Shown here: piece by piece, positions 9,005-64,000 of the stretch
Layout of the letters: the number at the start of each line of letters is the position of its first letter
Position numbering within the stretch: the first letter of the stretch is position 1
Virus record (IMG/VR): IMGVR_UViG_3300025000_000053
Coordinates: 124,001-188,000 of that record
Direction: 5' to 3' (one strand)
Length of the DNA: 64,000 nt
The notes under the pieces: generated by a model
Database searches by the model: none
What the model was told of the DNA's origin: nothing
Seen by the model: only the letters and a program-made list of their open reading frames with translations
Program-made: the position numbers and the translations under genes

Positions 9005-10249
9005 TTACTTCTCTTCATTAAATCCATACACATCTAACATTAGTGTATTTATATATAAAGCATTAACATATACTAATAATCTATAAGTTGAATATATATT
9101 AACATTTTTTGTTATAAGTGTTAATGTATTAAAATCAATATCATATTCACCTATATCTCTATTTAACATTTTATTATCCATCATAACAGAAAATTTTAAA
9201 ATTGTTTCTAATGGAATACCATGAGTTAAACAATAGTCAATAGATGCTAGTATAGAGTTATTTAATACTTGTTTTATATTCATTAAATCAGGCATAGTAT
9301 CACTTTCAACTTTATATAAAGGATATGCATATAAAGTCCATCCATTAGGCATTTGTTCACTAAATAAATTATTTATTGTAAACATGGGTATTATTTGATT
9401 TTTATTATCAATAATCGACATATCAGTTTGTGTTATTATTCCTGAGGATTGTGTTACATAATAATATAAACCGGCTCCATTAAATTCTGTTGAGATTGTA
9501 AAAGTCGTAGCATATGAATCGGCAACCATTCCTTTCTTGTTACCATCATCAATAGCTAAATTAGAAAAAATTGTATCTATATTAACAGGATAAAATCTAA
9601 AAAATTCATCATTAGATGAAGCGTTCTTTACTTTATAAGTTACTGGATATATAGATACACTATTTATATAATCTAAAAAAGTTTTAATACTTCCATCAGG
9701 AGTATACAAATCAATTCCTATATCTTTAGATAAAAGTTCCATAAGCCCTCTAGGAACATAGCTTTCTAAACATGTTTCTAAAAAAAATGGTTTATCTTGT
9801 CTTATTCTATTCTTCAAATAATTAGCTTGATTTAATTGTTGTATTTGCGTATCTGTTACTATTGTTACATCAAAATACATTTTTATACGATTTAATAAAT
9901 ATTTTATATATACACCTTTTGTTTTATCTTCAATAAATGGTTGTAAATTACTAAAATCTATATCCATAAAATTATCTGTAATTCTAGTAGTTAAGTATGT
10001 TCCGTAGAGAAATGTGTCACTATCATCTAATTCAATTCTTGGTTTAATTATTAATATAGGTTTATTCTTTTTTATAAATTCTCTATTTGAGTTTTGAAAT
10101 ATATTGAATTGTTTATAAGCTATAGTAGAACTAATATGAATTGTTTTAAAATAATTTGGAACAAATAAACCTCTAACAAATTCTGTCATAAAAGAAGTGA
10201 TATTACCAAAAGTATGTGCTAAAGATGTTTGAGCCATAGCATATTCCAT
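9005..10249 (-). CDS. Putative jumbo-phage virion/core protein
   Basis: 414 aa; RBS GGAGG; late-type promoter AACA-TTCATT-TA at 10279-10290. Confidence 0.45.
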   Translation of the reverse strand: MEYAMAQTSLAHTFGNITSFMTEFVRGLFVPNYFKTIHISSTIAYKQFNIFQNSNREFIKKNKPILIIKPRIELDDSDTFLYGTYLTTRITDNFMDIDFSNLQPFIEDKTKGVYIKYLLNRIKMYFDVTIVTDTQIQQLNQANYLKNRIRQDKPFFLETCLESYVPRGLMELLSKDIGIDLYTPDGSIKTFLDYINSVSIYPVTYKVKNASSNDEFFRFYPVNIDTIFSNLAIDDGNKKGMVADSYATTFTISTEFNGAGLYYYVTQSSGIITQTDMSIIDNKNQIIPMFTINNLFSEQMPNGWTLYAYPLYKVESDTMPDLMNIKQVLNNSILASIDYCLTHGIPLETILKFSVMMDNKMLNRDIGEYDIDFNTLTLITKNVNIYSTYRLLVYVNALYINTLMLDVYGFNEEK

Positions 10250-10342
10250 AGAATTAACCTCCTATTTTATATATGTATTAAATGAATGTTTTGTTATAAA
10301 GAATAAATGAAAAAAATAAAGGTGAATAATTTCACCTTTATT

Positions 10343-50456: not shown

Positions 50457-53400
50457 TTGATTTTTATTTCTGATATACCACATTTAAAAACCTATAAGCA
50501 AAAAGTTCTATTACCTAAAGATGAGAAGTATCCTAGTATTAATAGTGTAGTTTTTATTATTAATAATAACATACAATCATCTATAGGACTATTAAACCAT
50601 CAATTTATTAAGAATAATAACATGTATCATTTTTATTTTATGGATCACGTATATAACGGTAAATTATTTAATAGAACTTTTAGAGTTTTATATCGTAATG
50701 AAAGAAATGATATTTATAATAATATAGAAAAAGAAGTTCGATTCATACAAACAGTTCTAGATTTACATTCAGTAAATAAGAAAAATATATATGTTGATTT
50801 AATAAAACATAATAGTTTATTCTTTCAATTAAGTAAAAAAGTTAATTTTACAATTCGTATTAAAAATTATATAGATTATCTAGATAAGTTAATTAATGAT
50901 AGTCATTTTAATCAGTATAAGTATAAAACTATTTGTATTGATATTAATAGTTGGGTTAGTGATTTAAAGACTCAAATAAAAGGTAAATTAAATTTTGATA
51001 ATCCAATATTTATTATTTATTATTGTATGTATAAATACCTTGAAAAATTTAAAGAACTAGGGGATATTAATATTATTTTCTATACTAATGATAGTGTATT
51101 AAGATTAAATCCTTCATTATGTGATAAAAGCTCATATTCTTTATTTAAGAAAGAGATTATCAAAGCGTCTCCTAAAAGTTTATTAGATATGAGTGAAGAT
51201 AATATTGAAAAAGTACTAAAAAGAAAAGATGTTGCTGATAAAATAATAGGATATCTTAATGACCAACATAGATTTGTTGGTGATGATAAAACTGAAGAAG
51301 ATGAAAATTTTGAAACTAGTATTGAAGATAAAGTAGATGAAATAATTGATGCTAATAAGTTAGATAATAATAGTAATGATGAGATGTATAGTGAAGTTTC
51401 AAAAGTTATTATTAATGATGATGAAATTATAAAAAAAATTCATATGATGAATCAAGAGAATAAAGTTGGTAGAAGTACAGCTTCTATTAAAAGGGACGAA
51501 GAATTAAGAAAAAGACAAAAAGAGATAATAAAAGATAAAATAGGAATAGATAATATCTATGAAACTAATAAAGAACAACTAGATATTCCTAAATTTGATG
51601 TTACAGATAAAGTTAATACTACTAATAAAAATGTAACTACTATAAGATATCCTCAATTTGAAAAAGCTTATAATGAAGTTCTTCATGAAAAGGATTTACT
51701 TAATAATATAAAATTTTTAAATGAAAAATCTATTCCAGTTTATATTAGAGGTATAGAACGAGTTGATTCATCCGATGAATTAAATTTAAAAGAAACATAT
51801 ACTTTTGATTTAGAAGATGAAAATAGAGTTAGGCATAAATTAAAATTTGATATCCCTAAATTTATAGATGATAAATTTTTATATCTTGGTGGTAATAAAA
51901 AGATTATTATGAAGCAATTATTTATGAAGCCAGTGGTTAAGACTGGACCAGATGAAGTACAGATTTGTACTAATTACAATAAGATGTTTATTAGACGCTA
52001 TGGTAATAAAATATCATCTAAAATAGAAAAAATGAGAAAATTATTATATGAACAAAAAGAAGGTAAAGGTATTAAAGTTAAATATGGTAATAATTTATCT
52101 ATTAATAACAAATATGATACTACTATAGAATATGATGAATTATCTAAAAGCTTTACTTATATCCGTATAGGTAAAACTGAATTTTATTTTAATCAAGATG
52201 ATGCTACAAATATAGTTAAAGATAAAAAAATAAAACTTAATCAAAATGAATTCTTATTAGGTCTTATTGAAAATGGTAAAAATCCAATACCTATTACAAT
52301 TGATAAAAATACTCAAAAAATAGGCACATCTTTCGATATAGTTGACTATATACTTTCTATGTTGACACAAGGATTAGTGCAAGATTTTGATGATACTAAA
52401 AGTGGTAAGAAATTTGTTTACACTAGAGCTTATATAATGGAAAGACATGTTCCAGTAGTTTTGTTAATTTCATTCTTAGAAGGTTTATCTACAGTAATAA
52501 AAAAAGCTAATATTAAACATTATTTTTCAGATAAAAGACCTAAAGATATTACTCATAATGAGGGAATAATTCAATTTAGTGACGGGTATTTAATATATGA
52601 AAAATATCCATTTGAAAATTCTTTATTAATGAATGCATTTGCAGATATTCCAACTAAAACTTTCGAATATGGTGAATTTGATTCAAAAGATGTTTATTTA
52701 TCTTTATTTGATACTTTATATGGTAATAGGATAATTGGTAATGCCTTTCTTAACTCATATGAATTTTTAATTGATCCTATTACAAGAGAAGTATTAGAAG
52801 ATTTAAACTATCCAACAGATTATGTTTCTTTAGTTTTATATGCTAATTCTTTATTAGCAACTAATTCATATATTAAAGAAAATAATATGAATTTATATAG
52901 AATAAGATCAAATGAACTGGTTAATGCCTTATTATATAAAGAAGTTGCTAATGCTTATATTAAGTATAGAACTACTTCTTTAAATAATAATCCTGTTAAA
53001 ATTTCTGTACCACAAGATGTTATTATTAAAAAGATACTTGTTGCACAGACAGTCGAGGACTACAGCACATTAAATCCTATAACCGAAGTCGAGAAATCCC
53101 GTATGATCAGTCCAAAAGGACATTCAGGAATGAACCTGGATGAAGCGTATACACAAGATAAAAGAGCATATGATAAAACGATGCTTGGTATAATAGCTAT
53201 GTCAACTTCACCGGATTCATCGTGTGGAGTAACAAGACAACTTACATTAGAACCCAATATAAAAAATCCGAGGGGATATATCGATATAAATGACGATAGA
53301 TTAGAAATTTTAAAAGATGCAAATCTATTTTCTCCAGCTGAATTATTATCTCCTCTCGGAAATACAAGGGATGAACTTGCTATTGTCCCACTATGTAGAA

Positions 53401-56093
53401 ATATATAGTTAAAAACTCTTCTAATTGTCGGGGACATCCTTAACGCTCTTATTACCAAACTAATATAGTAATATATTAGTGGTGAAGGGTAATGCCTTAG
53501 GTATGGTAACAAGATAAGAGATTGGGTTATCCGCAGCTAAGATTCCTATAAATTTTATAGGAATAAAGTTCAAAGACTATCGAAAGCATGTTTATTATTG
53601 ATATAAAATATAATAAACAGAAGTGAGTAGAGTAGGGAAACCGAAACGGAGAGCATCTGAACACATAATGGTGAAGATGATGATATAGTCTGTCACTTAT
53701 GGAAATCATAGGTGGTTCCTGGATAGCATAAGAACAGCGATAAATAAAACTTGTCGCATTATCTAGTAATAGATAAATAAAAAATCTCCTTAATTGTCGG
53801 GAAATCTCTTAGAGCCTAAAACTACTAAGTTATATTAGTAATAATATAATGGCTTAGTCTAATCAACTAAGGTATAGTAATAAGGTTTTAGGATTGAGTA
53901 ATCCGCAGCTAAGATTCTAATATATTAGAATAAAGTTCAACGACTATCGAAGGCAAACTTATTATAGAAATAAAAATATAATGAGTTTGTTAGTAGAGTA
54001 GGGCTCAAGTGAGTTCTGAAATGGGAGACTCCTTATTATTTAATAATAAGGATGAAGATATAGTCTTATATCCTAAGGAAACTTAGGGAAGTTCATAAAA
54101 GAACTGCATAGATTAACGATCTATGTGAAATAAATGGAGTGTAAAACAATCGAAACATATCGTACCTGTAGTTAAACAATCACCAGTTTTATTATCTAAT
54201 GGAGTTGAACAAGTTATTCAATATCACTTATCTGATGATTTTTCAGTTGTAGCTAAAGATGATGGTGAAGTTGTTGAGATAGATAGTGAAACTGGTTTAA
54301 TTATTATTAAATATAAAAATGGTGAAACTAAAGTAATTGATACAAGTCCAAAAGTTGTAAAAAATGGTAAACTAAATGCCCACTTATATGGTGACATATA
54401 TGTGAATCTTCTTTAATTGTCGGGGAAACTCTTAGAACTTTTTATTATATAATAAAAAGATTGAGTAATCCGCAGCCAAGTCTCATAGTAAAAAAAATAA
54501 AGTTCATGAAGAACTCTATTACAAAGATATTGGAAAATTTTATAAAAAATCAAATACTCCATGGTATTTTATTGTATAACAAAGTTGATGATGAGTTGAT
54601 CTGAGTTCTTTTTTAATAATTTTAAAATCTATATCTATCAAATATTTCTCTAATAAGGGAAGTGTTTCTTCAATGAATATATTAAAAAGTTCTAAGTTCT
54701 TTTTAGCTATGAAAAAGTCACTAATTTTTTTGATATCATTATTATATCTTTTTAGTTCATTTTCATACCTCTGGGTAAAGAATTTTTTAGTTAATTCTAT
54801 CGATATAGGATTACAAAACTCATCACTTAACTCATTAATATTCCTCATTATAATATCTTTGTAATTAATTTCTCCTTGCTTCATTTTATTTATCATTCCT
54901 TTCTTTTTTATATTACGTAAATAATATATAAATGAAAAATAATGAAATACTATGAGAAAGGTTCAACGACTATCCCTTTGGCTTTGAAATAAGCAATAGG
55001 AGTAGGGCTCAAGTGAGTGGGTGAGAATCCCTTAAATCGAAATAGGAAGCATCCTTATGAGATGAAGATATAGTCTAGTATCTTATCGAAAGATAAGGAA
55101 GTTCATAAGAGAACTGCATAGATTAACGACCTATGTGAATATATATCGGCTGGTGGTTTCTTCTTATCAAATAAATTAACATGTAATTTGAAAGTAGGGC
55201 AAAAAATAAAAAAACGAGATATATTAGCTTATGACAGTAACTTTTTTAGTAATAGTAAATTATATGGTAATAGATTCAATATTGGTTCATTACAGAAAAT
55301 AGCGTGTATGTCCTCATACTCAACATATGAGGATTCTACTTTTGTCACTAAGAAATTATGTGAAGATATGGCAACTGAGATTGTTATGGAAAAACCAGTT
55401 GTCTTAGGTAAAAATGCTAATGTTGATTATATTGTTGAAATAGGTCAAAATGTTAGTGTTGGTGATGAACTAATTAGATTTGAAGTTTCTTTTAAAGATG
55501 AATCACTAAATAAATTTCTTTCAAATATTGGAGATGAATTAAAAGAAGAAATTAAAGCAATGGGTAAAACACCTATTAAAACTAAATACTCTGGTGTAAT
55601 TGAAGACATTAAAGTATATTCAACTGTAGATGTAGAAGAACTATCTCCAACATTAAAAAAAATTGTTAATAATTATTATGATAGAATTAATAAGAAGAAA
55701 AAAATTATTAATAAATATAATAAAAGTGATTCTGTATATAAATGTGGTATAATGTTAAATGAACCTGTAACTAAGATTGAAACTAAAGATGGTAAAGTTA
55801 AAAGTCATACTGTTAATTCAGGAGTTTTAATTATATTTTATATTAAATATAAAGATACAGTTGGTGTTGGTGATAAGATATGTTTCTTTACTGCTTTGAA
55901 ATCTATTGTCGGTGAAGTTATCCCTGAAGGATATGAACCATATTCTTTATTTAGACCAGATGAGAAGATTTCTTCAGTGGTTGCTCCAGGAGCAGTAATG
56001 AATAGAATGACCCCTTCTGTTATTCTATCAATGTTCGGTAATAAAGTATTGATAGAATTAAAACGAAAATTAAAAGATATTTATGATGAATAA
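50457..56093 (+). CDS. Phage RNA polymerase beta part, spliced from 4 exons (50457-53372, 53722-53741, 54137-54368, 55149-56093; ~1370 aa); probably the virion RNAP
   Basis: KGHSGMN, STSPDSSCGVTRQL, junctions NTRD|DSIRTAM|SVKQSKHIVP and VVKNG|AGGFFL, VGDK, NRMTPS; lacks the extreme beta C-terminus; late promoter at 50409-50420. Confidence 0.9.
53373..53721 (+). mobile_element. Group I intron 1 of RNAP beta (349 nt, no ORF)
   Basis: P1 GGGAU|GA:UUGUCCC; P10 GAUAGCA:UGCUAUU; AAUUGUCGGG, AUCCGCAGC, GUUCAAAGACUA, GAUAUAGUC; ends in G. Confidence 0.9.
53722..53741 (+). other. 20-nt micro-exon GATAGCATAAGAACAGCGAT
   Basis: Bounded by the terminal G of intron 1 and the P1 of intron 2; encodes DSIRTA plus AT of the Met codon. 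Confidence 0.85.
53742..54136 (+). mobile_element. Group I intron 2 of RNAP beta (395 nt, no ORF)
   Basis: P1 GCGAU|A:UGUCGC; AAUUGUCGGG, AAUCCGCAGC, GUUCAACGACUA, GAUAUAGUC; ends ...AAAUG. Confidence 0.9.
54369..55148 (+). mobile_element. Group I intron 3 of RNAP beta (780 nt) carrying an antisense ORF in the P6 loop
   Basis: P1 GGU|A:UGCC; same core motifs; stem TCTCATAGTA (54481-54490) : TACTATGAGA (54948-54957) encloses a ~460-nt insert; ends ...AUAUCG. Confidence 0.88.
54540..54896 (-). CDS. Orphan ORF antisense within intron 3
   Basis: 118 aa (114 aa from the second ATG); RBS-like AAGGA; early-type promoter at 54921-54930; no LAGLIDADG, GIY-YIG or HNH motif visible. Confidence 0.65.
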   Translation of the reverse strand: MINKMKQGEINYKDIIMRNINELSDEFCNPISIELTKKFFTQRYENELKRYNNDIKKISDFFIAKKNLELFNIFIEETLPLLEKYLIDIDFKIIKKELRSTHHQLCYTIKYHGVFDFL

Positions 56094-56139: not shown

Positions 56140-56220
56140 TTTTATATTATCATTTTTTGTTTAATAAAAAAACATTAATTTAAACAATAAACTTTTAATG
56201 AAAGGGGTTGTAATAATAAA

Positions 56221-59200
56221 TTGGATATAAAAAATAAAACTAAAATTAAGACTAAGTCACCCACAGCATTAAATTGGTTTAAAAATGTTGGAAAATCTTT
56301 AGGTTATACTACAACTGAATTAATTGAAGAAATGATTCCTGCTCCAATAGAATTTATTAAAAGTAATACTCAAACATTTAAAAATTTTTATGATGAATTA
56401 CGTAAAAATAAATCAATAAATAAAAAATTGTCGGATCAAATGATAAAGAATGAATATATCAATATAGGTCAAACAGCAATAAAAAATGCTTTAAAAGATA
56501 TTAAATCAGGTAAGATTTATAACAAAGATAGACAAGATGAAATATTTAATGATGATATTGATTTTGAATTTGGTGATGATATAAATTTTGATAATGAAGA
56601 TTATAAAGTTTCATCAGATACAACATCTGAATCAAGTACAAGTAGTTCTTCACCTACTATCAACAGAGTGAATATTACTTCTAATATCAATAGAAATAAT
56701 CCTATGGTTAGAGCTGTAGAAAGACAAACTGAAGCTATATATAATACAACTCAAGCTAGTGATAAAATATCAATATCTTTAGCTACTAATCATATGATGA
56801 TAAATAGAAAAGTAGGGGAAGATATAAATACAGGTTTAAGTGCTATAAATGATAATTTAAGTTTACTTGTTAATTTTCAAAGTGAATCAATGACTAAATA
56901 TATAGGTACTACATTTAAATACTATGAAGAAAGTTTGAATGTATTTAACAATATTCATGAGCAAATGAAAAAAGGTACTATTACTGTAGATGATAAGACA
57001 GGTAAAGAAAAATTTGATCCTATGGAATCAGTTTTTCTTTCTAGAGGTGGGTTAAATCTATCAGGTTATGCTAATTTAATTAAAAAACAGTTTGGTACAG
57101 CTGTAGACCAAGATATGATTTTATCTCAATTAAAATATATGTTATCAGATAAAGACCAATTAAAATTTTTAGCTGCTTCACCTATAAGTTTTTTATCTAC
57201 TAAGATAGTAACTGCATTTATTCCGTCTATGTTAAAACAAACATTAACTAGTATGAATAAAAGTTTTGAAAATTTCTTCCCAGCTTTATTAATGAAAGCT
57301 AATAGAATGGTTGGTTCTCAAAATCCAATACTTAATTTCTTAGGTCAAGTTTTTGGTATAAATGTAAAACAGAAATCATCTGTTGATTTATCTCAATATA
57401 ATAAAGGTAAAACTGCTTTTGATGGTTATACAAAGAAAGCTATAACAGAAGTAATACCAGGATATTTAAGAAAGATTTTAGCTGCATTAAATGGTAAAGA
57501 AGAAGTTGCTTTTGATTATGATAATGGTGTTTTTAAATCTATGGATTCTATGAATAAAGATTTTCAAAGTACTGTTAATAGAAGTATATTAAGTAGTTTT
57601 TCTGATGTTATGAATGAAATAAAAGACAAAGCAAATGCTTTTAATATTCAAAATGATGAGGAACGAAAGAAATTTAATAAAGACTTAGAAAGTTTTTTCT
57701 TAAAACTTCCTAGTTTAAATAAATTAATAAATCCTATAAGAACTAAAGATAATGATGGTAATAGTATAAATGAATTAAAAACTGTACATGATTTTGGTAG
57801 TGAAGAAATGAATAATTTCTTTAGACAATTAGTACTATCACTTGATAAAGGTGATATTCAGAAAATGTTTGGTACAGATGTATTAAATGCTAGAAAAAAT
57901 AAAGAAAAAATATATAATGATGCTGAACTTAATCCATTAAGATATAACGCAGCTTTAATTAATAATCAATTAAATTTTGATGATCATATTAAGAGAAATA
58001 AATATAATAAAAGTCAATTTGAAGTAAAAAAAGGTTTTGGAGTTTTATCTAAAACCGATCAATTTAATAAAATTGATTTGGACTATTTACGTGATATTAA
58101 AGAAATTTTATTAAGAGGTATTAAAGTATTCCCTGTAACTCAGATAATTAATCCAGATGGTTCAATATCTCAACCAAGTTTTGAATATCATGATACACAA
58201 TTAAGAAGAATGAGAAGTCAGGAAAGAGAAAGAGATAGAAAATTTAAAGTAAAACCCCAACAAGATACTGAAATTACACCTGAATTAGAAAGGATTAATA
58301 GACAGCAGGGTAAAAGAATAGTTAATAGATTATCAGATTCAGATATAACTCCTGAAGAAATGAGAGAACAAATTAGAGTATTTGATGAACAAAGAAGAAG
58401 TGATTCAGAAAGAGATAGAAGACAACAAAGTGGTTGGTTAGGAAGTTTTATATCTGGGGATATGCAAACTAAATATAATTTATTAAGAGAAAAAGTAAGA
58501 GATATCTTTAATACACCTGCTAAATTACTTAATACTGTATTTAAAAAAATAGATGAAACTATGTTTAAAATAGTCTTTGGTGATGATGACAAAGGTAATT
58601 CTTCTTTTCTTAATAGAACATGGTCTTTAATGCAAAGTAATTTTCAAAAAATGTCTGAATGGTTTAAAGATAAAATATTTAATCCTATTAGAGAATCTTT
58701 ATTTGGACCAAATGGTTTTATAACTAAATTAAAGAATTCTGAATTATTTACAAAAATTAAATCTAATTTTAGTAAATTAACAGATTTTTTATTTGGACTA
58801 AAAGATTCTACTGGTAAAAGAAAAGGTGGGATGTTTTCTGATACATCTAACCATCTTTTAGATATATTTGATAGTGCTAAATACTATTTTACAGGTAAAG
58901 CTTATATAAATAGATCAGGATTATCTTTTCCTACTAATAATAAAAGTGTATTTGGTGAACTAAAATCAATGTTTTCAGGTTTTAAAGATACTATAAAATC
59001 TTATTTATTTGGTAGAAGGAATCAAGATGGGAATATACAAGAAACAGGTATTCTTTCAACAGCTATTAATAGTATAAAGGATGGTTTTCAAAACTTTTCA
59101 AATGCTATTTTTGGTCCACAGAAAATTGGTGGTAAGGATAATAAAAATTATGTAATAGTTAGTGATTTATTTAAGAAGTTTAAAGAAAGATTACCTAAAT

Positions 59201-62200
59201 CATTATCTTTTGGTATTATCGGAGCTGGTAGTGGGTTATTAATGGGTGGTAAGTTAGGTTTATTAGGTTCATTATTTCTTCCTGGTGGTCCTATTGGTGG
59301 AGCTATTGTTGGTACCACAGTTGGTTTCTTATCTCAATCAGATAGATTTAAAGATTGGTTATTTGGTTCTAAAGATATTAATAATAATCGTATTGGTGGT
59401 TTTATTAATAAGAAAACTCAAGAGTTCTTTAAAAAAAATAAAGTTGGTATCGTTGGTGGTGCCAGTTTAGGAGCTCTTAAATCTATATTAGGATTTGGAT
59501 TATTACCCTCGTTCTTTTTACCTGGTGGTCCTATTGGTGGTGCATTATTTGGTGCCGGTTTATCAATGTTAGTTAGTTCAGAGAAATTTAAGAAATTTAT
59601 GTTTGGGGATTTACAAGCAGACGGAAATAGAATTGGTGGAATAGCTCAAAAAATATTTGGTAAAGTTGATAGAAATAAAGCTAAAAAGATGTTTGGTAAT
59701 GTTAGTGCTGGTATAATAGGTGGAGCTGGTATAGGATTCGTAACTAGTAAATTTGGTTTATTAGGTGCCGCTTTATTACCAGGTGGTCCTTTAGGTGGAG
59801 CCTTATTAGGTGCCGCCGCCGGTATTGCTCTATCTTCTGAAAAATGGAAGAAGTTAGTATTTGGTGAATTTGATGATGAAACTCAATTAAGAAAAGGTGG
59901 TTTATTAGGTAAAGTTATTAATTGGACTAATTTAGAAATTCTTCAACCTATTAAAATTAAATTACAAGAAATAAATTTAAATGTTAAAGAATGGTTTACA
60001 AGAAGTATTGCTAACCCATTTCTTAATGCAATTGATCCAATTAAACATGAAATAAAATTAATGATACGTAGTTTAAAAGATAATTTTGTAGAAGGTTGGA
60101 CTAGTTTTAAAGTTTTTATTGGTAATGTATTTGAAAAACATGTAGGTGCACCTTTTGGTAAATTTATGGAAGATAGAGTTATGAAACCATTAAGAGGATT
60201 TATATCAAAAATATTAGGTGGGATTGGTAGAATTGTTGGTAGTATTGTATCAGCACCATTTAAAGGTATGGAAGGTTTATCAAGAGGATTAAATAGAAAA
60301 CATATGCAAGCTGGTTTAGATGCATATGTTGAAGAAGGTTGGAGTGATTTATTAGATTTTAAAGGTAGAAGACAACGTGGAGAAAAAATAGGTTTCTTTG
60401 GTGGATTAAAGAAATTTAAAGATATTTATTTTAATAGAGAAGCTAGAGAGGACGCTAAAAATAGTAGTAAAGGTGCTCCATATTCTAAGCAATTAGAAAT
60501 TGATAGACAAAAACGTGAAGAAGAGGCTAATACTAAATTTTCCAATGAAAGAGAAAACATAAGAAAAATGTGGAGTTCTTGGAGAGATAGAAAAAGAGCT
60601 GGTGCTGATAATAATTATGATAATTTTAGTCCTGATGGTAAAGTTGTTAAAAACCAGTATTACCCTCCAGATGAACAAAGAGTAGATAGAAATTCACCTA
60701 ATCCAATTAATGATGTTACAGATGATATAACTAGAAGAACTGGTAGGAAAGGAAGAAGAGGTAAACCTAATCCTAAACCTGTAAATGATCAAAGTGTAAT
60801 TATATTACCTGGTTCAGTTCAACAAGATGACACATCAACGATTGTTGATGATGTTACAGATGTTATCTATAGAAGAACTGGAAATAGATCAAATAGTAGA
60901 AGAGGAAAAAAATCAACAACATCCCCACAACCTATTATTAATCAAAATGAACAACAATCTGAAGAGTCATCACAACCAATTATTAATCAAAATCAACCAC
61001 CTAGTAAAAAACCATCTACTACAAGAATTAAATCATCTAATGAATTATTACTACAGATAGCTACTGATGTAAGAACTATTGCTAAAGAAGTTAATGGTCA
61101 ATTAGATGGTGTTGGTGGTAATGTTTATAAAATAAGAAAATTAATTCAATCACAACAAGGTATATCAGATGAAGATTTAAGTGGTGAATCGAATAGAGAT
61201 AGGATTGGATTCTTTGGTAAAATAAGAAGAATGTTATATAGACCAATAGATACTATTAAAGAGAAAGTATTAGGTTCTATTAAATTTGTAACTGATAAAA
61301 TTACTTCTGTAGGTAAAACAATATTTGATTTTAGTAAAACAATATTGGTTACTATACCTAAACAAATATTTTCAACTATGTACAATATAGGTTCTGAAAT
61401 ATTATCAATCGGAAAAGAAACTTTTCTTAATATAATTAAATTACCTGGTCAATTATTGAATTTATTTGCTCAAACCACAAAAATATTTGCTGAATCAATT
61501 AAAATGATATCACCTGCTATTGGGGAAACTCTTAAAGGTGTTGCCAAATTATTCTCAGGTACAATGGGAATGATCGCTGAATCAATGATAGGTGTTGGTA
61601 AAGGTATTGGTCAAGTTGCTTTTAGTATTGGTGAGGCTATTGGCTCAATAATATCTACTTTTAGTAAAGGTTTGATGAGTGTAGTTCCAGTAGTAGGTAA
61701 ATTTTTATTGACATCTAGTAAGATGATTATGGATTTCGGATTTGGTATAATTAAGAATGTTGGTGGTTTATTAACAAGTATTACTAAATCTTTATTTAGT
61801 ATAGCAACATCACCAATTAGATTTGCAGCGGATATGCTTGGTAGAGCTGTAGGTATTAAGAGATCTGAAATGTATATTACAGGTGGTGTTATTGATGTAG
61901 TTAGAAGGATTGGTGATAATACCTCTGACTTTACACAAAAACCAAAAGATGATAATAGAAGTAATATATTTGATAATTCAGATAATGTTGTTATGCCAGT
62001 AAGAGTAGATGGTGTTACTTCAGTTAGAATTGTTGGTTCGGATAGACCAATTCCTATTTATTTTAATATGAATATGAATCAAAATCAACGTAGAAGTAAT
62101 TCATTTAATAATAATATATCAGGATTGCCTAATTCAATTAATACGGGAAATAATAATTATTTAGTTTCTTCATTAACGAATGCACTTGATATATTTGATA

Positions 62201-64000
62201 CAGAAAATGATAAAGAAGAAGAAAATAAACGAATAGAAAAAGAAAGAGAAAAAGAATTATATCAAAACCAACTCGAAGTTTCTAAAAAAACATCAGGGTT
62301 CTTAATAGCTCAAAATAATTTAAGAAATGAAAAAGATTTTACTAGAAATAATGAAATAAGACAGACATCATTATTGCAACAAATTGCAAATATATCAAAA
62401 AATCAACATGAAAGTTGGTTATCACTATTTGGTAAGAAAGGTATTTTAACAGTTGCCTTTTTATTAACACTACCATATTTAGAAAAAATATTTAAATGGA
62501 TTAAGGGATTTTTTGGTGGTGATGATGATACTGGTATTGGAGGTGGTATATCTACTGTTGTTAAAAAGGCATTAGGTTTAATAGAAAAAAACGATGGTAG
62601 TCGTAAAGATGCTGAAGATAAAGATATTATAAATGCTCAGGGTAGAGAAAGTTATATTAAAGGTACCGCTGTTTTAGCAAGAAGATATAGTCCTAAGTTA
62701 GTAAAAGCAATAGAAAAAGGTAAAGATAAAATAGCGAATTCTAATATTGTAAAAAATGTTACTAGATATGGTTCAAATTTAAAAAATGCTTTTAATCCAT
62801 CAAGTACTGTCAGAGGTGGAACTATTGATGCATCTTTCAAGGTTACTGATGATACTGGTAAAATAATTAAAGAAGTTACTGTAAATGATTCAAATAAAAT
62901 TATTCAAGCTATTAAGAATACTTTTGAGAGATTTTTTAATAATTCATTTGTTAAGAAACTATTAGGTTCATCTGCTGGTAAAATAGCTAGTAAAATAATA
63001 AATGAAGTTACTAAAGTATTAAATTATAAGACTATGTTTAATAATATGGCTAAATTATCAAAGGCTTTTTTAAGAACAGGTGTTATTATGTTTGCTGCCC
63101 CTGTAATAATATCTTGGGATTTAGCTACAGGTGCCTATGAAGCATCAAGAATATTTAAAGTTGCAAATGAATCTGTTGATGGTAAAATGCAAATAGCTTC
63201 TTCTGTAACTAAAGCATTAATAGGATTCTTCCCAGTAATTGATATTTTATCAGAAATATTTAATGAGCAGACTGGTATGAGTTTAAAACAATATGTTGCA
63301 ACAACTATTTATTCAATGTTAGCATCAACAGAAGAAATTAAAAAATTAGAAGTAGATAAAAAAGCTTTTGAGCAAGATAAAAATGAGTATAATGAAAAAA
63401 ATAAAACTAAACTATCATTAAATGCATATAATGATATGAAAAATAAAACGTTCTTCCAGAAATTTATTAGTAATCCCTTATCAAAAACTAAAGATTTTAT
63501 TGTGAAAACAGGAAGCAGTATCAGTAATAGTCTATCTGAAAATTGGGATAATTTTAAAGGTGGTTTTAGTAAAGGTTTTAAAATGATGGGTGATGATGTT
63601 TCTAATGCAATGTCTAAAACACCTGAAATGATTAAAACATTTAAGGATACATTATCTAAAAATTGGAAAGAACTAAAAGATAATAGCGAAAAACAATGGA
63701 ATAATATGAAAGGCTTTGTTTCTAAATCTTTAAAGGATACTAATAATACGTTGGGTATATTATTTGGATATAAAGATGAAGAAGGAAATGATGTTAGTTT
63801 TACAGAAGGATTTAATAAAGGATTTAAAGGACTTATAAAAAGCATTAGAGATAGTTGGAAAGATATTGGTGATGGTGCTAAATTTTATTGGGATAATACA
63901 AAAGCATTCACAGAAAGAAAATGGAAAGAATTAAGTGAGAAATTACCAAAGGCATTTGAAAGTTTAGATAACTGGTTAGGTGAACTATTAGGATTTAAAG
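56221..64000 (+). CDS. Giant virion protein (tape-measure/tail-associated-like), >2590 aa, 3'-truncated by the window edge; absent from the ORF track
   Basis: RBS AAAGGGG and TTG at 56221 (MDIKNKTKIKTKSPTALNWF). Frame open wherever spot-checked, through to 64000. Helical composition, Gly-rich LPGGP(I/L)GGA repeats, late promoter at 56171-56182. Confidence 0.75.
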   Translation, partial: MDIKNKTKIKTKSPTALNWFKNVGKSLGYTTTELIEEMIPAPIEFIKSNTQTFKNFYDELRKNKSINKKLSDQMIKNEYINIGQTAIKNALKDIKSGKIYNKDRQDEIFNDDIDFEFGDDINFDNEDYKVSSDTTSESSTSSSSPTINRVNITSNINRNNPMVRAVERQTEAIYNTTQASDKISISLATNHMMINRKVGEDINTGLSAINDNLSLLVNFQSESMTKYIGTTFKYYEESLNVFNNIHEQMKKGTITVDDKTGKEKFDPMESVFLSRGGLNLSGYANLIKKQFGTAVDQDMILSQLKYMLSDKDQLKFLAASPISFLSTKIVTAFIPSMLKQTLTSMNKSFENFFPALLMKANRMVGSQNPILNFLGQVFGINVKQKSSVDLSQYNKGKTAFDGYTKKAITEVIPGYLRKILAALNGKEEVAFDYDNGVFKSMDSMNKDFQSTVNRSILSSFSDVMNEIKDKANAFNIQNDEERKKFNKDLESFFLKLPSLNKLINPIRTKDNDGNSINELKTVHDFGSEEMNNFFRQLVLSLDKGDIQKMFGTDVLNARKNKEKIYNDAELNPLRYNAALINNQLNFDDHIKRNKYNKSQFEVKKGFGVLSKTDQFNKIDLDYLRDIKEILLRGIKVFPVTQIINPDGSISQPSFEYHDTQLRRMRSQERERDRKFKVKPQQDTEITPELERINRQQGKRIVNRLSDSDITPEEMREQIRVFDEQRRSDSERDRRQQSGWLGSFISGDMQTKYNLLREKVRDIFNTPAKLLNTVFKKIDETMFKIVFGDDDKGNSSFLNRTWSLMQSNFQKMSEWFKDKIFNPIRESLFGPNGFITKLKNSELFTKIKSNFSKLTDFLFGLKDSTGKRKGGMFSDTSNHLLDIFDSAKYYFTGKAYINRSGLSFPTNNKSVFGELKSMFSGFKDTIKSYLFGRRNQDGNIQETGILSTAINSIKDGFQNFSNAIFGPQKIGGKDNKNYVIVSDLFKKFKERLPKSLSFGIIGAGSGLLMGGKLGLLGSLFLPGGPIGGAIVGTTVGFLSQSDRFKDWLFGSKDINNNRIGGFINKKTQEFFKKNKVGIVGGASLGALKSILGFGLLPSFFLPGGPIGGALFGAGLSMLVSSEKFKKFMFGDLQADGNRIGGIAQKIFGKVDRNKAKKMFGNVSAGIIGGAGIGFVTSKFGLLGAALLPGGPLGGALLGAAAGIALSSEKWKKLVFGEFDDETQLRKGGLLGKVINWTNLEILQPIKIKLQEINLNVKEWFTRSIANPFLNAIDPIKHEIKLMIRSLKDNFVEGWTSFKVFIGNVFEKHVGAPFGKFMEDRVMKPLRGFISKILGGIGRIVGSIVSAPFKGMEGLSRGLNRKHMQAGLDAYVEEGWSDLLDFKGRRQRGEKIGFFGGLKKFKDIYFNREAREDAKNSSKGAPYSKQLEIDRQKREEEANTKFSNERENIRKMWSSWRDRKRAGADNNYDNFSPDGKVVKNQYYPPDEQRVDRNSPNPINDVTDDITRRTGRKGRRGKPNPKPVNDQSVIILPGSVQQDDTSTIVDDVTDVIYRRTGNRSNSRRGKKSTTSPQPIINQNEQQSEESSQPIINQNQPPSKKPSTTRIKSSNELLLQIATDVRTIAKEVNGQLDGVGGNVYKIRKLIQSQQGISDEDLSGESNRDRIGFFGKIRRMLYRPIDTIKEKVLGSIKFVTDKITSVGKTIFDFSKTILVTIPKQIFSTMYNIGSEILSIGKETFLNIIKLPGQLLNLFAQTTKIFAESIKMISPAIGETLKGVAKLFSGTMGMIAESMIGVGKGIGQVAFSIGEAIGSIISTFSKGLMSVVPVVGKFLLTSSKMIMDFGFGIIKNVGGLLTSITKSLFSIATSPIRFAADMLGRAVGIKRSEMYITGGVIDVVRRIGDNTSDFTQKPKDDNRSNIFDNSDNVVMPVRVDGVTSVRIVGSDRPIPIYFNMNMNQNQRRSNSFNNNISGLPNSINTGNNNYLVSSLTNALDIFDTENDKEEENKRIEKEREKELYQNQLEVSKKTSGFLIAQNNLRNEKDFTRNNEIRQTSLLQQIANISKNQHESWLSLFGKKGILTVAFLLTLPYLEKIFKWIKGFFGGDDDTGIGGGISTVVKKALGLIEKNDGSRKDAEDKDIINAQGRESYIKGTAVLARRYSPKLVKAIEKGKDKIANSNIVKNVTRYGSNLKNAFNPSSTVRGGTIDASFKVTDDTGKIIKEVTVNDSNKIIQAIKNTFERFFNNSFVKKLLGSSAGKIASKIINEVTKVLNYKTMFNNMAKLSKAFLRTGVIMFAAPVIISWDLATGAYEASRIFKVANESVDGKMQIASSVTKALIGFFPVIDILSEIFNEQTGMSLKQYVATTIYSMLASTEEIKKLEVDKKAFEQDKNEYNEKNKTKLSLNAYNDMKNKTFFQKFISNPLSKTKDFIVKTGSSISNSLSENWDNFKGGFSKGFKMMGDDVSNAMSKTPEMIKTFKDTLSKNWKELKDNSEKQWNNMKGFVSKSLKDTNNTLGILFGYKDEEGNDVSFTEGFNKGFKGLIKSIRDSWKDIGDGAKFYWDNTKAFTERKWKELSEKLPKAFESLDNWLGELLGFK

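What the first reader, a model, noticed from the sequence alone, without database searches (positions are those of the whole stretch)
53373..54136. Twin group I introns separated by a 20-nt micro-exon that encodes RNAP active-site residues
Seen: intron 1 ends ...GUUCCUG at 53721, then 20 nt, then intron 2 begins with a clean P1 (GCGAU|A:UGUCGC). Nearly all of the micro-exon is used in splicing signals: nt 1-7 form P10 with intron 1's guide (GAUAGCA:UGCUAUU) and nt 16-20 form P1 of intron 2. Spliced, it reads NTRD-DSIRTAM-SVKQ. Established: this aligns with E. coli beta HDDANRALMGANMQRQ (the R678/M681 region next to the NTP site). Inference: both ribozymes must splice accurately, perhaps in order, or the exon is skipped and the polymerase is dead. 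Skipping 20 nt would also shift the frame, which could act as a regulatory switch.
Basis: partly seen in the sequence, partly recalled or inferred. Interest (0 to 1): 0.85.

Follow-up and report, generated by a model that had tools for sequence, protein, structure and literature searches.

The report
Two self-splicing introns flanking 20-nt exon
A giant phage's own RNA polymerase gene is interrupted by two related self-splicing introns only 20 bases apart, and the sliver between them encodes active-site residues; the reading is correct, but very similar arrangements are already known in other phages.

Summary
Confirmed. Window 53373-53721 and 53742-54136 are two group I introns (Rfam RF00028, 61 and 60 bits, E about 1e-12). 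They flank a 20-nt exon (53722-53741) in the virion RNA polymerase beta gene of an uncultured AR9/PBS1-like jumbo phage (IMG/VR UViG 3300025000_000053, 24% GC). The spliced frame reads NTRD-DSIRTAM-SVKQ, collinear with uninterrupted homologues (seven listed ones read DDSIRTAM), and aligns to E. coli beta D675-M681.

Natural variants fix the junctions. A 93% relative from the same metagenome has intron 1 but no intron 2, with the identical micro-exon fused to exon 3. Relatives at 71% have neither intron. A third phage has both introns, the same 20-nt exon and a compensatory change in P10.

The architecture is not new. Twort orf142 has a 23-nt exon between similar IA2 introns, with exon skipping. 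By my reconstruction AR9's homologous gene has an 11-nt exon, and MarsHill's intron sits in the same Met codon. A regulatory switch or obligatory splicing order is untested; skipping is conceivable and would be lethal to the product. This is a new member of a known kind, of moderate interest. A third intron (54369-55148) carries an unexplained antisense ORF cassette.

The parts
50457..53372 (+). Exon 1 of the virion-RNAP beta-subunit gene (972 codons); its last 5 nt, GGGAU (53368-53372), form the 5' strand of P1 of intron 1
   Evidence: ORF list; tblastn to jumbo-phage vRNAP beta genes; collinear with LPJP1 residues 1-1034; in-frame reconstruction
53373..53721 (+). Intron 1: ORF-less group I intron of subgroup IA type, 349 nt. 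P10 guide 53378-53384 (UGCUAUU); IGS 53385-53389 (GUCCC); P2 53390-53409; P3 53416-53421/53648-53653; P4 53426-53432/53530-53535; P6/P6a 53536-53569; P7 53574-53580/53683-53691; P7.1/P7.2 53581-53647; P8 53654-53679; P9 53694-53714; terminal G at 53721
   Evidence: Rfam 61 bits; P1/P10; element coordinates; compensatory pairs; P7.1 hairpin; same intron at the same site in phages R (L008) and T (L015)
53722..53741 (+). Micro-exon, 20 nt, GATAGCATAAGAACAGCGAT. It encodes D S I R T A plus the first two bases of Met (E. coli beta D675-M681). Nt 1-7 form P10 of intron 1; nt 16-20 form P1 of intron 2
   Evidence: Identical 20-mer contiguous with exon 3 in L008. 20-nt counterpart with 3 substitutions and a compensated P10 change in L015
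53742..54136 (+). Intron 2: ORF-less group I intron of subgroup IA type, 395 nt, about 70% identical to intron 1 over its whole length. P10 guide 53749-53752 (ACUU); IGS 53753-53757 (GUCGC); P2 53759-53776; P3 53785-53790/54023-54028; P4 53795-53801/53902-53907; P6/P6a 53908-53936; P7 53941-53947/54058-54066; P7.1/P7.2 53948-54022; P8 54029-54054; P9 54070-54088; P9.1 54091-54104; P9.2 54106-54126; terminal G at 54136
   Evidence: Rfam 60.4 bits; alignment to intron 1; precisely absent in L008; same insertion point (AT|G of the Met codon) as the MarsHill intron and the introns in L045 and L082; P7.1/P7.2 z = -6.6
54137..54368 (+). Exon 3 (232 nt): third base of the Met codon plus 77 codons, SVKQSKHIVP...VVKNG
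54369..55148 (+). Intron 3: group I intron, 780 nt, split by an insert in the P6 loop, so it scores below the Rfam gathering threshold. Junctions come from homology (KNG|AGGF); its P1 is weak (3 bp)
   Evidence: Rfam sub-threshold halves at 54418-54506 and 54899-55098; junction from the intronless L009; in-frame reconstruction; P1 table
54540..54896 (-). Antisense ORF (118 aa by the ORF list; the collection's gene call starts at a later ATG, 114 aa) inside the P6 loop of intron 3, preceded on its own strand by a TATATTAT motif and AAAGGA. Function unknown
   Evidence: 47% identical homologue in intron 1 of L008; a third homologue antisense in the site-3 intron of L015; family of 36 cluster representatives; no Pfam/PHROG/PDB match; upstream motif
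55149..56093 (+). Exon 4 (314 codons plus stop), matches Pfam RNA_pol_Rpb2_6
   Evidence: Pfam PF00562, E 4.3e-6

Best explanation
Two separate, ORF-less, self-splicing group I introns of the phage IA type sit 20 nt apart in the gene for the beta subunit of the virion RNA polymerase of an AR9/PBS1-like jumbo phage. Each ribozyme finds its own splice sites through its own internal guide. Intron 1 pairs GUCCC with the end of exon 1 (P1) and UGCUAUU with the first 7 nt of the micro-exon (P10). Intron 2 pairs GUCGC with the last 5 nt of the micro-exon (P1) and ACUU with the start of exon 3 (P10). Two independent, constitutive splicing events, in either order, rebuild the invariant D-x-x-R-x-x-M active-site motif. 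Any incomplete or skipped product stops within 11-14 codons. On this reading the micro-exon is not a device. It is what remains between two neighbouring insertion sites in a short, strongly conserved stretch of coding DNA that mobile introns hit repeatedly in this phage group. Shown here: the introns, their guides, the junctions, the reading frame, the presence/absence alleles and recurrent use of the sites. Inferred: that both ribozymes are active, that splicing is constitutive and order-independent, and that the arrangement arose by successive invasions.
For: Both introns exceed the Rfam gathering score. Their core helices P3, P4, P6, P8 and P9 are kept through compensatory changes: 27 of 43 predicted pairs, including P3 between introns 1 and 2. 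Guides co-vary with exon context across 11 introns of this gene family. P10 at site 1 shows a C-G to U-A double change between the window and phage T. The spliced product is 1370 aa, stop-free, and collinear over its full length (about 60% identity) with uninterrupted homologues that read TRDDSIRTAM. Phage R (93% aa identity, from the same metagenome) lacks intron 2 exactly at 53741|54137. Relatives at 71% lack both introns. Phage T has both introns and a 20-nt micro-exon. Site 2 is also occupied in MarsHill, L045 and L082, and L069 has an intron after the Arg codon. That makes three distinct sites within 8 codons, while 65 of 73 IMG/VR loci are intron-free in this region. By my reconstruction AR9's homologous gene has five introns and an 11-nt micro-exon.
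Against: There are no RNA data, so activity, accuracy and order of splicing are inferred from sequence only. Intron 2's P10 is short (4 bp in the window, 2 bp in phage T). The two 5' splice sites differ by a single central mismatch in P1, and slipped hybrid P3 helices are almost iso-energetic with the cognate ones. Some exon skipping, as seen in Twort, therefore cannot be excluded. Neither intron encodes an endonuclease, so how they reached or keep their sites is unknown. Intron 2 is only about 70% identical to any other intron found, so no donor was identified.
Confidence: 0.82

Rival explanations
1. Programmed alternative splicing. The two similar introns sometimes act together, either as one hybrid ribozyme or by intron 2 using the exon 1 junction as an alternative 5' splice site, and skip the micro-exon. 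The resulting frameshift would serve as a switch or timer limiting production of full-length virion RNAP beta.
For: Skipping shifts the frame and stops after 12 codons. The introns are about 70% identical over their full length. P1 cross-recognition is blocked by only one mismatch, and slipped hybrid P3 duplexes are within about 1 kcal/mol of the cognate ones. Skipping of a 23-nt exon between similar IA2 introns is documented in Twort, and skipping of an internal exon is the dominant variant in SIOphi TerL.
Against: The skipped product lacks everything from the active-site motif onward, and no function for it is evident. Both incompletely spliced RNAs give near-identical truncations, so skipping adds no distinct product. 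The guides and P10s are differentiated, which in engineered tandem introns favours inclusion. Relatives do without one or both introns, so no essential regulatory role is conserved.
Confidence: 0.07
2. Site-blocking in phage-phage competition. The introns persist because each one disrupts the recognition site of a homing endonuclease carried by co-infecting relatives. Double occupancy would protect an essential gene from cleavage at two neighbouring target sites. This bears on why the arrangement is kept, not on how it splices, so it can coexist with the best explanation.
For: Phages with different intron complements in this gene co-occur in one metagenome. Relatives carry HNH/NUMOD4 endonuclease ORFs in introns of the same gene (L008 intron 3, AR9 g190, L015). 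An intron-encoded HNH in the RNAP gene of PhiPA3 is reported to disable the PhiKZ gene during co-infection (quoted).
Against: No endonuclease that targets site 1 or site 2 was identified. Introns 1 and 2 of the window are ORF-less. The ORF in MarsHill's site-2 intron has only zinc-ribbon-like hits.
Confidence: 0.1
3. Decayed gene. One or both introns no longer splice and the beta gene is a pseudogene in this metagenome-assembled phage.
For: Rfam scores (60-61 bits) are lower than those of most AR9 introns (51-102 bits). P7.2 of intron 1 is minimal. There are no RNA data.
Against: All four exons are open and collinear with homologues over 1370 aa. Core helices are kept by compensatory changes. 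The same twin arrangement is kept in a phage whose flanking exons are 60-78% identical in protein. The virion RNAP is needed for early transcription in this phage group (established for AR9).
Confidence: 0.03

Closest known systems
Staphylococcus phage Twort orf142, introns 2 and 3 (Landthaler and Shub 1999, as summarised in PMC10136302 and PMC3073962)
   Same: Two highly similar subgroup IA2 group I introns in one phage protein gene, separated by a very short exon (23 nt there, 20 nt here). Each has its own P1.
   Different: The host gene differs: a Twort ORF of undefined function versus the RNAP beta active-site region. [quoted passage not shown] Twort's original paper was not available to me, so the details come from secondary sources.
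Bacillus phage AR9 g189 (virion RNAP beta; GenBank KU878088, CDS joined from 6 pieces)
   Same: It is the homologous gene, interrupted by five group I introns of the same sequence family. By my reconstruction, introns 2 and 3 are separated by an 11-nt micro-exon (L003 7526-7536) encoding K-V-G-(V). The product is in-frame at 1397 aa and matches an uninterrupted homologue that reads PDSDKVGVVRQL.
   Different: All five AR9 sites differ from the window's three. AR9's micro-exon lies about 50 codons upstream, not in the DxxRxxM motif. One AR9 flanking intron carries an HNH gene. I could not see the deposited join coordinates or read Lavysh et al. 2016, and I found no canonical P1 for AR9 intron 2 at my junction.
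Staphylococcus jumbo phage MarsHill, virion RNAP beta intron (MW248466, CDS joined from 2 pieces)
   Same: A group I intron at the identical position as the window's intron 2, between the second and third base of the Met codon of R-x-x-M.
   Different: It is a single intron of 1302 nt that carries an ORF. Its guide is GUCCC pairing with GGGAU, the pairing used by the window's intron 1 rather than intron 2. There is no intron at site 1, so no micro-exon.
Coxiella burnetii 23S rRNA introns; engineered tandem Tetrahymena introns (PMC10136302); phiNIT1 and SIOphi introns (PMC11878797)
   Same: Short exons (34 nt, 24 nt, 'small exon') between two group I introns. Inclusion and skipping were both observed, and differentiated P1/P10 favours inclusion.
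   Different: They involve an rRNA gene or an artificial reporter, different intron subgroups and different genes.

Membership tests
Group I intron (Rfam RF00028) | Covariance-model score at or above the curated gathering score (50 bits) | tested here: met
   61.0 and 60.4 bits, full-length model matches
Group I intron (Rfam RF00028) | 5' splice site after a U that forms a U.G wobble with the internal guide in P1; intron ends in G | tested here: met
   GGGAU/GUCCC and GCGAU/GUCGC; terminal G at 53721 and 54136
Group I intron (Rfam RF00028) | Conserved core helices P3-P9 supported by covariation | tested here: met
   RNAalifold on six ORF-less introns of the family recovers P3, P4, P6/6a, P8, P9 and P9.1/9.2; 27 of 43 pairs show double changes. 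The P7 strands are complementary but invariant, so they are uninformative.
Group I intron (Rfam RF00028) | Guanosine-dependent self-splicing | not testable with these tools
   Needs in vitro transcription and a splicing assay
Subgroup IA (phage IA2-like) group I introns | Extra P7.1/P7.2 hairpins between P7 and P3' | tested here: met
   Inserts of 67 and 75 nt at that position. Intron 2 folds into two hairpins (z = -6.6). Intron 1 has a 10-bp P7.1 and a minimal P7.2 (z = -2.7). No subgroup-specific model was run.
[quoted passage not shown] | Two group I introns in one gene separated by an exon of a few tens of nt that supplies P10 to one intron and P1 to the other | tested here: met
   20-nt exon; nt 1-7 in P10 of intron 1, nt 16-20 in P1 of intron 2
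[quoted passage not shown] | Exon-skipped product alongside the exon-included product | not testable with these tools
   No RNA data. Compatibility analysis is inconclusive.
Twintron (an intron inserted inside another intron) | The inner intron interrupts the outer intron's sequence, and nothing between them is retained in the mRNA | tested here: not met
   The 20 nt between the introns encode conserved residues present in intron-less homologues, and they are contiguous with exon 3 in L008
Mobile group I intron with an intron-encoded homing endonuclease | An endonuclease ORF within the intron | tested here: not met
   The longest stop-free stretches are 64 aa (intron 1) and 31 aa (intron 2). 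Relatives do carry HNH ORFs in other introns of the gene.
Multisubunit RNA polymerase beta subunit (jumbo-phage virion RNAP, AR9 gp189-like) | Homology to bacterial beta across the active-site region, including the D-D-x-x-R-x-x-M motif | tested here: met
   hhalign to E. coli RpoB, 98.3% probability over 459 columns; profile hits to 45 PDB beta-subunit sequences; Pfam Rpb2_6 on exon 4

The most novel reading that the evidence does not exclude
The twin arrangement could be a functional checkpoint. The two paralogous ribozymes share a 20-nt exon and differ by a single guide nucleotide, so the ratio of exon inclusion to exon skipping (or a required splicing order) would set how much full-length virion RNAP beta is made late in infection. 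That would be a ribozyme-level alternative-splicing control in a phage. The existence of natural two-intron, one-intron and no-intron alleles would make it directly testable.
Probability: 0.07. Interest if true: 0.7.

Novelty: new member of a known kind. Interest (0 to 1): 0.35.

Why it matters
This is a clean natural example of two ribozymes that must each cut precisely within 20 nt of the other to rebuild a polymerase active site. It comes with its own controls: a co-occurring phage with only intron 1, relatives with none, others with only the site-2 intron, and a second phage with both introns and a compensated P10 change. That set could be used to study how tandem group I introns avoid or exploit exon skipping, which has so far been examined mainly in Twort and in engineered Tetrahymena constructs. 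It also shows that the eight codons around the beta-subunit Arg/Met motif are an intron insertion hotspot in jumbo phages, with three distinct sites. That fits the idea that mobile introns settle where imprecise loss is lethal. For annotation, it is a reminder that gene callers will truncate this essential gene at about 983 aa and miss micro-exons.

Tried and rejected
1. DNA-level search of the 3.4-kb region in INPHARED phages gave no close relative, only intron-like pieces shared with Staphylococcus phage introns.
2. phmmer of a single divergent homologue against PDB found nothing. A 3-sequence profile was needed.
3. The AR9 genome paper (PMC13189113) and the Twort PNAS paper (PMC22036) are not held, so their details come from secondary sources and from my own reconstruction.
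4. An exact look-up of my reconstructed AR9 and MarsHill proteins among the retrieved homologues found no identical entry. Support comes instead from an uninterrupted homologue of the same length.
5. The metagenome scan for the exact 20-mer added only the window's own contig and phage R. The second twin (phage T) turned up by chance, through the antisense-ORF family.
6. A twintron reading was rejected because the 20 nt are coding and conserved.
7. A recent tandem duplication of intron 1 as the origin of intron 2 was rejected. The two are only about 70% identical, while the flanking exons of phages W and R are about 88-91% identical, and the introns are mosaics of a shared pool.
8. Hybrid-ribozyme compatibility was inconclusive: in-register P3 is mismatched, but slipped duplexes are nearly iso-energetic.
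9. The function of the antisense ORF remains unknown: no Pfam, PHROG or PDB-fold match, and the word-based homologue search found only itself.
10. A covariance model of my own was not built, because introns of 350-400 nt exceed the practical calibration limit.

Full report
**What is there.** The window is 24% G+C and is identical to part of IMG/VR UViG 3300025000_000053, a 249,853-bp contig. Rfam finds exactly two group I introns above the gathering score in the 64 kb, at 53368-53713 (61.0 bits) and 53732-54088 (60.4 bits), both on the + strand. A long ORF from 50457 runs into the first intron and stops at 53408. Its product is related to the virion RNA polymerase beta subunit of AR9/PBS1-like jumbo phages: Listeria LPJP1, the Staphylococcus phages MarsHill, Madawaska and S6, and Bacillus AR9 and PBS1, at 36-42% identity. 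Exon 4 matches Pfam RNA_pol_Rpb2_6.

**Junctions and pairings.**
- Exon 1 ends in U at 53372.
- Intron 1 is 53373-53721 and ends in G.
- The micro-exon is 53722-53741.
- Intron 2 is 53742-54136 and ends in G.
- P1 of intron 1 is GGGAU/GUCCC.
- Its P10 is GAUAGCA/UGCUAUU, 7 of 7, and lies immediately 5' of the guide. No other G in 53690-53745 is followed by more than two consecutive P10 pairs.
- P1 of intron 2 is GCGAU/GUCGC, and its P10 is 4 bp.

Twelve of the 20 micro-exon nucleotides therefore take part in these helices. Across 11 introns of this gene family the guide co-varies with each intron's own exon end.

**Are the introns likely to be active?** The evidence from sequence is good, though indirect.
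- The two introns align end to end at about 70% identity, so they are true paralogues.
- Both have an insert between P7 and P3' that folds into P7.1/P7.2, as expected for subgroup IA introns.
- RNAalifold on six ORF-less family members recovers P3, P4, P6, P8, P9 and P9.1/9.2, and 27 of 43 pairs show compensatory double changes.
- Neither intron holds an ORF longer than 64 codons.

**The protein.** The four-exon reconstruction (50457-53372, 53722-53741, 54137-54368, 55149-56093) is in frame, has no internal stop and gives 1370 aa. It is collinear over its full length, at about 60% identity, with uninterrupted homologues that read SPLGVTRDDSIRTAMATKQSKHIIP. The window's spliced product reads SPLGNTRDDSIRTAMSVKQSKHIVP. 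Of the 120 listed uninterrupted homologues, 107 have D..R..M...Q and 7 have exactly DDSIRTAM. A profile of uninterrupted homologues aligns to E. coli RpoB with 98.3% probability. It places the motif on D674 D675 A676 N677 R678 A679 L680 M681, and the same profile hits bacterial beta subunits in the PDB. Intron 1 therefore sits between the codons equivalent to D674 and D675, and intron 2 sits after the second base of the M681 codon. That R678 lines the NTP site is established structural knowledge and was not tested here.

**Natural alleles fix the junctions.**
- Phage R (L008 = L012, IMG/VR 3300025010_000028, also a 233-kb contig in the same metagenome as the window) is 93% identical in this protein region. 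It has intron 1 at the same site, and its identical micro-exon runs straight into exon 3. Intron 2 is thus absent exactly at 53741|54137.
- Two relatives at 71% (L009, L010) have no intron here and read TRDDSNRTAM.
- Phage T (L015, JGI 3300024999, 241.7 kb, also found in ENA assemblies) has both introns and a 20-nt micro-exon, GATAGTACAAGAACTGCGAT, and splices in frame to GVTRDDSTRTAMASKQSKH.
- In phage T the micro-exon's nt 6 is U instead of C, and intron 1's guide reads UACUAUU instead of UGCUAUU. This is a compensatory change in P10.

**An intron hotspot.** In a survey of 73 IMG/VR loci, 65 have no intron in the region covering these sites. Site 2 is also occupied in L045 and L082, with the same GCGAU/GUCGC P1. 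L069 has an intron just after the Arg codon. MarsHill's single annotated intron lies in the same Met codon. Three insertion sites therefore fall within eight codons.

**Precedent.** The MarsHill preprint states that RNAP genes of these phages are frequently intron-disrupted.
- AR9's homologous gene g189 is annotated as a join of six pieces. Rfam finds five introns in it.
- My reconstruction of AR9 needs an 11-nt micro-exon (L003 7526-7536) between introns 2 and 3. It is in frame at 1397 aa and matches an uninterrupted homologue that reads PDSDKVGVVRQL.
- I could not see AR9's deposited coordinates, and I found no canonical P1 for AR9 intron 2.
- Twort orf142 has a 23-nt exon between two highly similar IA2 introns, and that exon is either included or skipped.
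- Coxiella 23S rRNA has a 34-nt exon between two group I introns. Engineered tandem Tetrahymena introns with a 24-nt exon give both products, and differentiated P1/P10 favours inclusion.

**Mechanism.** I think the most likely reading is two independent, constitutive self-splicing events with no required order, because P10 of intron 1 and P1 of intron 2 use non-overlapping ends of the micro-exon. Every other outcome is a dead end:
- the unspliced RNA stops at 983 aa;
- the RNA with only intron 1 removed stops at 986 aa;
- the exon-skipped RNA stops at 984 aa.

Skipping is conceivable. Each guide mismatches the other's 5' exon at only one central position, and although hybrid P3 helices are mismatched in register, slipped ones are nearly iso-energetic. 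A regulatory role is not supported by anything seen here, and relatives manage with one intron or none.

**Origin.** Intron 2 is not a fresh copy of intron 1. The two are about 70% identical, while the exons of phages W and R are about 88-91% identical. The introns are mosaics of a shared pool: the 5' half of intron 2 is 78% identical to R's intron 1, and its 3' tail resembles the intron 3 and AR9-type tails. Whether W gained intron 2 or R lost it cannot be decided.

**Verdict.** The observation and the structural interpretation are correct and unusually well supported by comparative data. The kind of arrangement is already known, so this is a new member of a known kind. Interest is moderate, mainly as a natural test system with built-in allelic controls.

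Noticed in passing
window 54369-55148 (+): A third group I intron lies in the same gene, below the Rfam gathering score because about 400 nt are inserted in its P6 loop. Its junctions (KNG|AGGF) come from homology. Its P1 is only 3 bp with my simple search.
   Followed up: partly
window 54540-54896 (-); L008 7297-7641 (-); L015 2501-2866 (+): A conserved ORF of about 115 aa is encoded ANTISENSE inside the P6 loop of group I introns at different sites: the window's intron 3, phage R's intron 1 (47% aa identity) and phage T's site-3 intron. In the window and phage R it has its own TATATTAT-like motif and Shine-Dalgarno sequence; a hairpin/T-run terminator follows it in phage R. The family has 36 cluster representatives of about 105-140 aa. 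There is no Pfam, PHROG or PDB-fold match. AF2 predicts a four-helix protein (pLDDT 74). It is not a recognisable homing endonuclease, and its function is unknown.
   Followed up: partly
L008/L012 versus the window (same metagenome, Ga0209318): Two phages about 88-91% identical in DNA co-occur in one sample with different intron complements in this gene. Window: I1, I2 and I3 with the antisense ORF. Phage R: I1 with the antisense ORF, no I2, and I3 with a sense HNH/NUMOD4 endonuclease ORF (L008 8282-9037).
   Followed up: partly
L015 (whole locus, gene on the minus strand): Phage T's copy of the gene carries at least five group I introns. Its site-1 intron holds a different antisense ORF (147 aa, L015 3777-4220) unrelated to the family above (hhalign probability 0.1).
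   Followed up: partly
L069 about 9956-10257: In another IMG/VR phage a roughly 300-nt intron seems to sit right after the Arg codon of the DxxRxxM motif. That would be a third insertion site inside what is the micro-exon in the window. The exact junction was not resolved.
   Followed up: no
L002 7074-8375 (MarsHill) versus window intron 1: MarsHill's site-2 intron uses GGGAU/GUCCC, the same P1 as the window's site-1 intron, and the two target sequences are alike (GGGAU|GAUAGC versus GGGAU|GACAGG). This could point to movement of an intron between the two neighbouring sites.
   Followed up: no
L003 7191-7525 (AR9 intron 2): With the only in-frame junction I could find (exon 2 ending ...CGGAU), no canonical P1 with a U.G wobble is apparent in the first 40 nt of AR9 intron 2.
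   Followed up: no
window 56191-63999 (+): A stop-free frame of at least 2603 codons starts just downstream of the beta gene and runs off the end of the window. It is presumably a giant (virion?) protein gene.
   Followed up: no
query positions 2148-2345 (window about 54947-55144): The 3' part of intron 3 is 77-81% identical to introns in Staphylococcus phage K-like lysK genes, in MarsHill and in an Enterococcus phage. Two Vibrio phage records with short matches of at least 99% identity were not examined.
   Followed up: no
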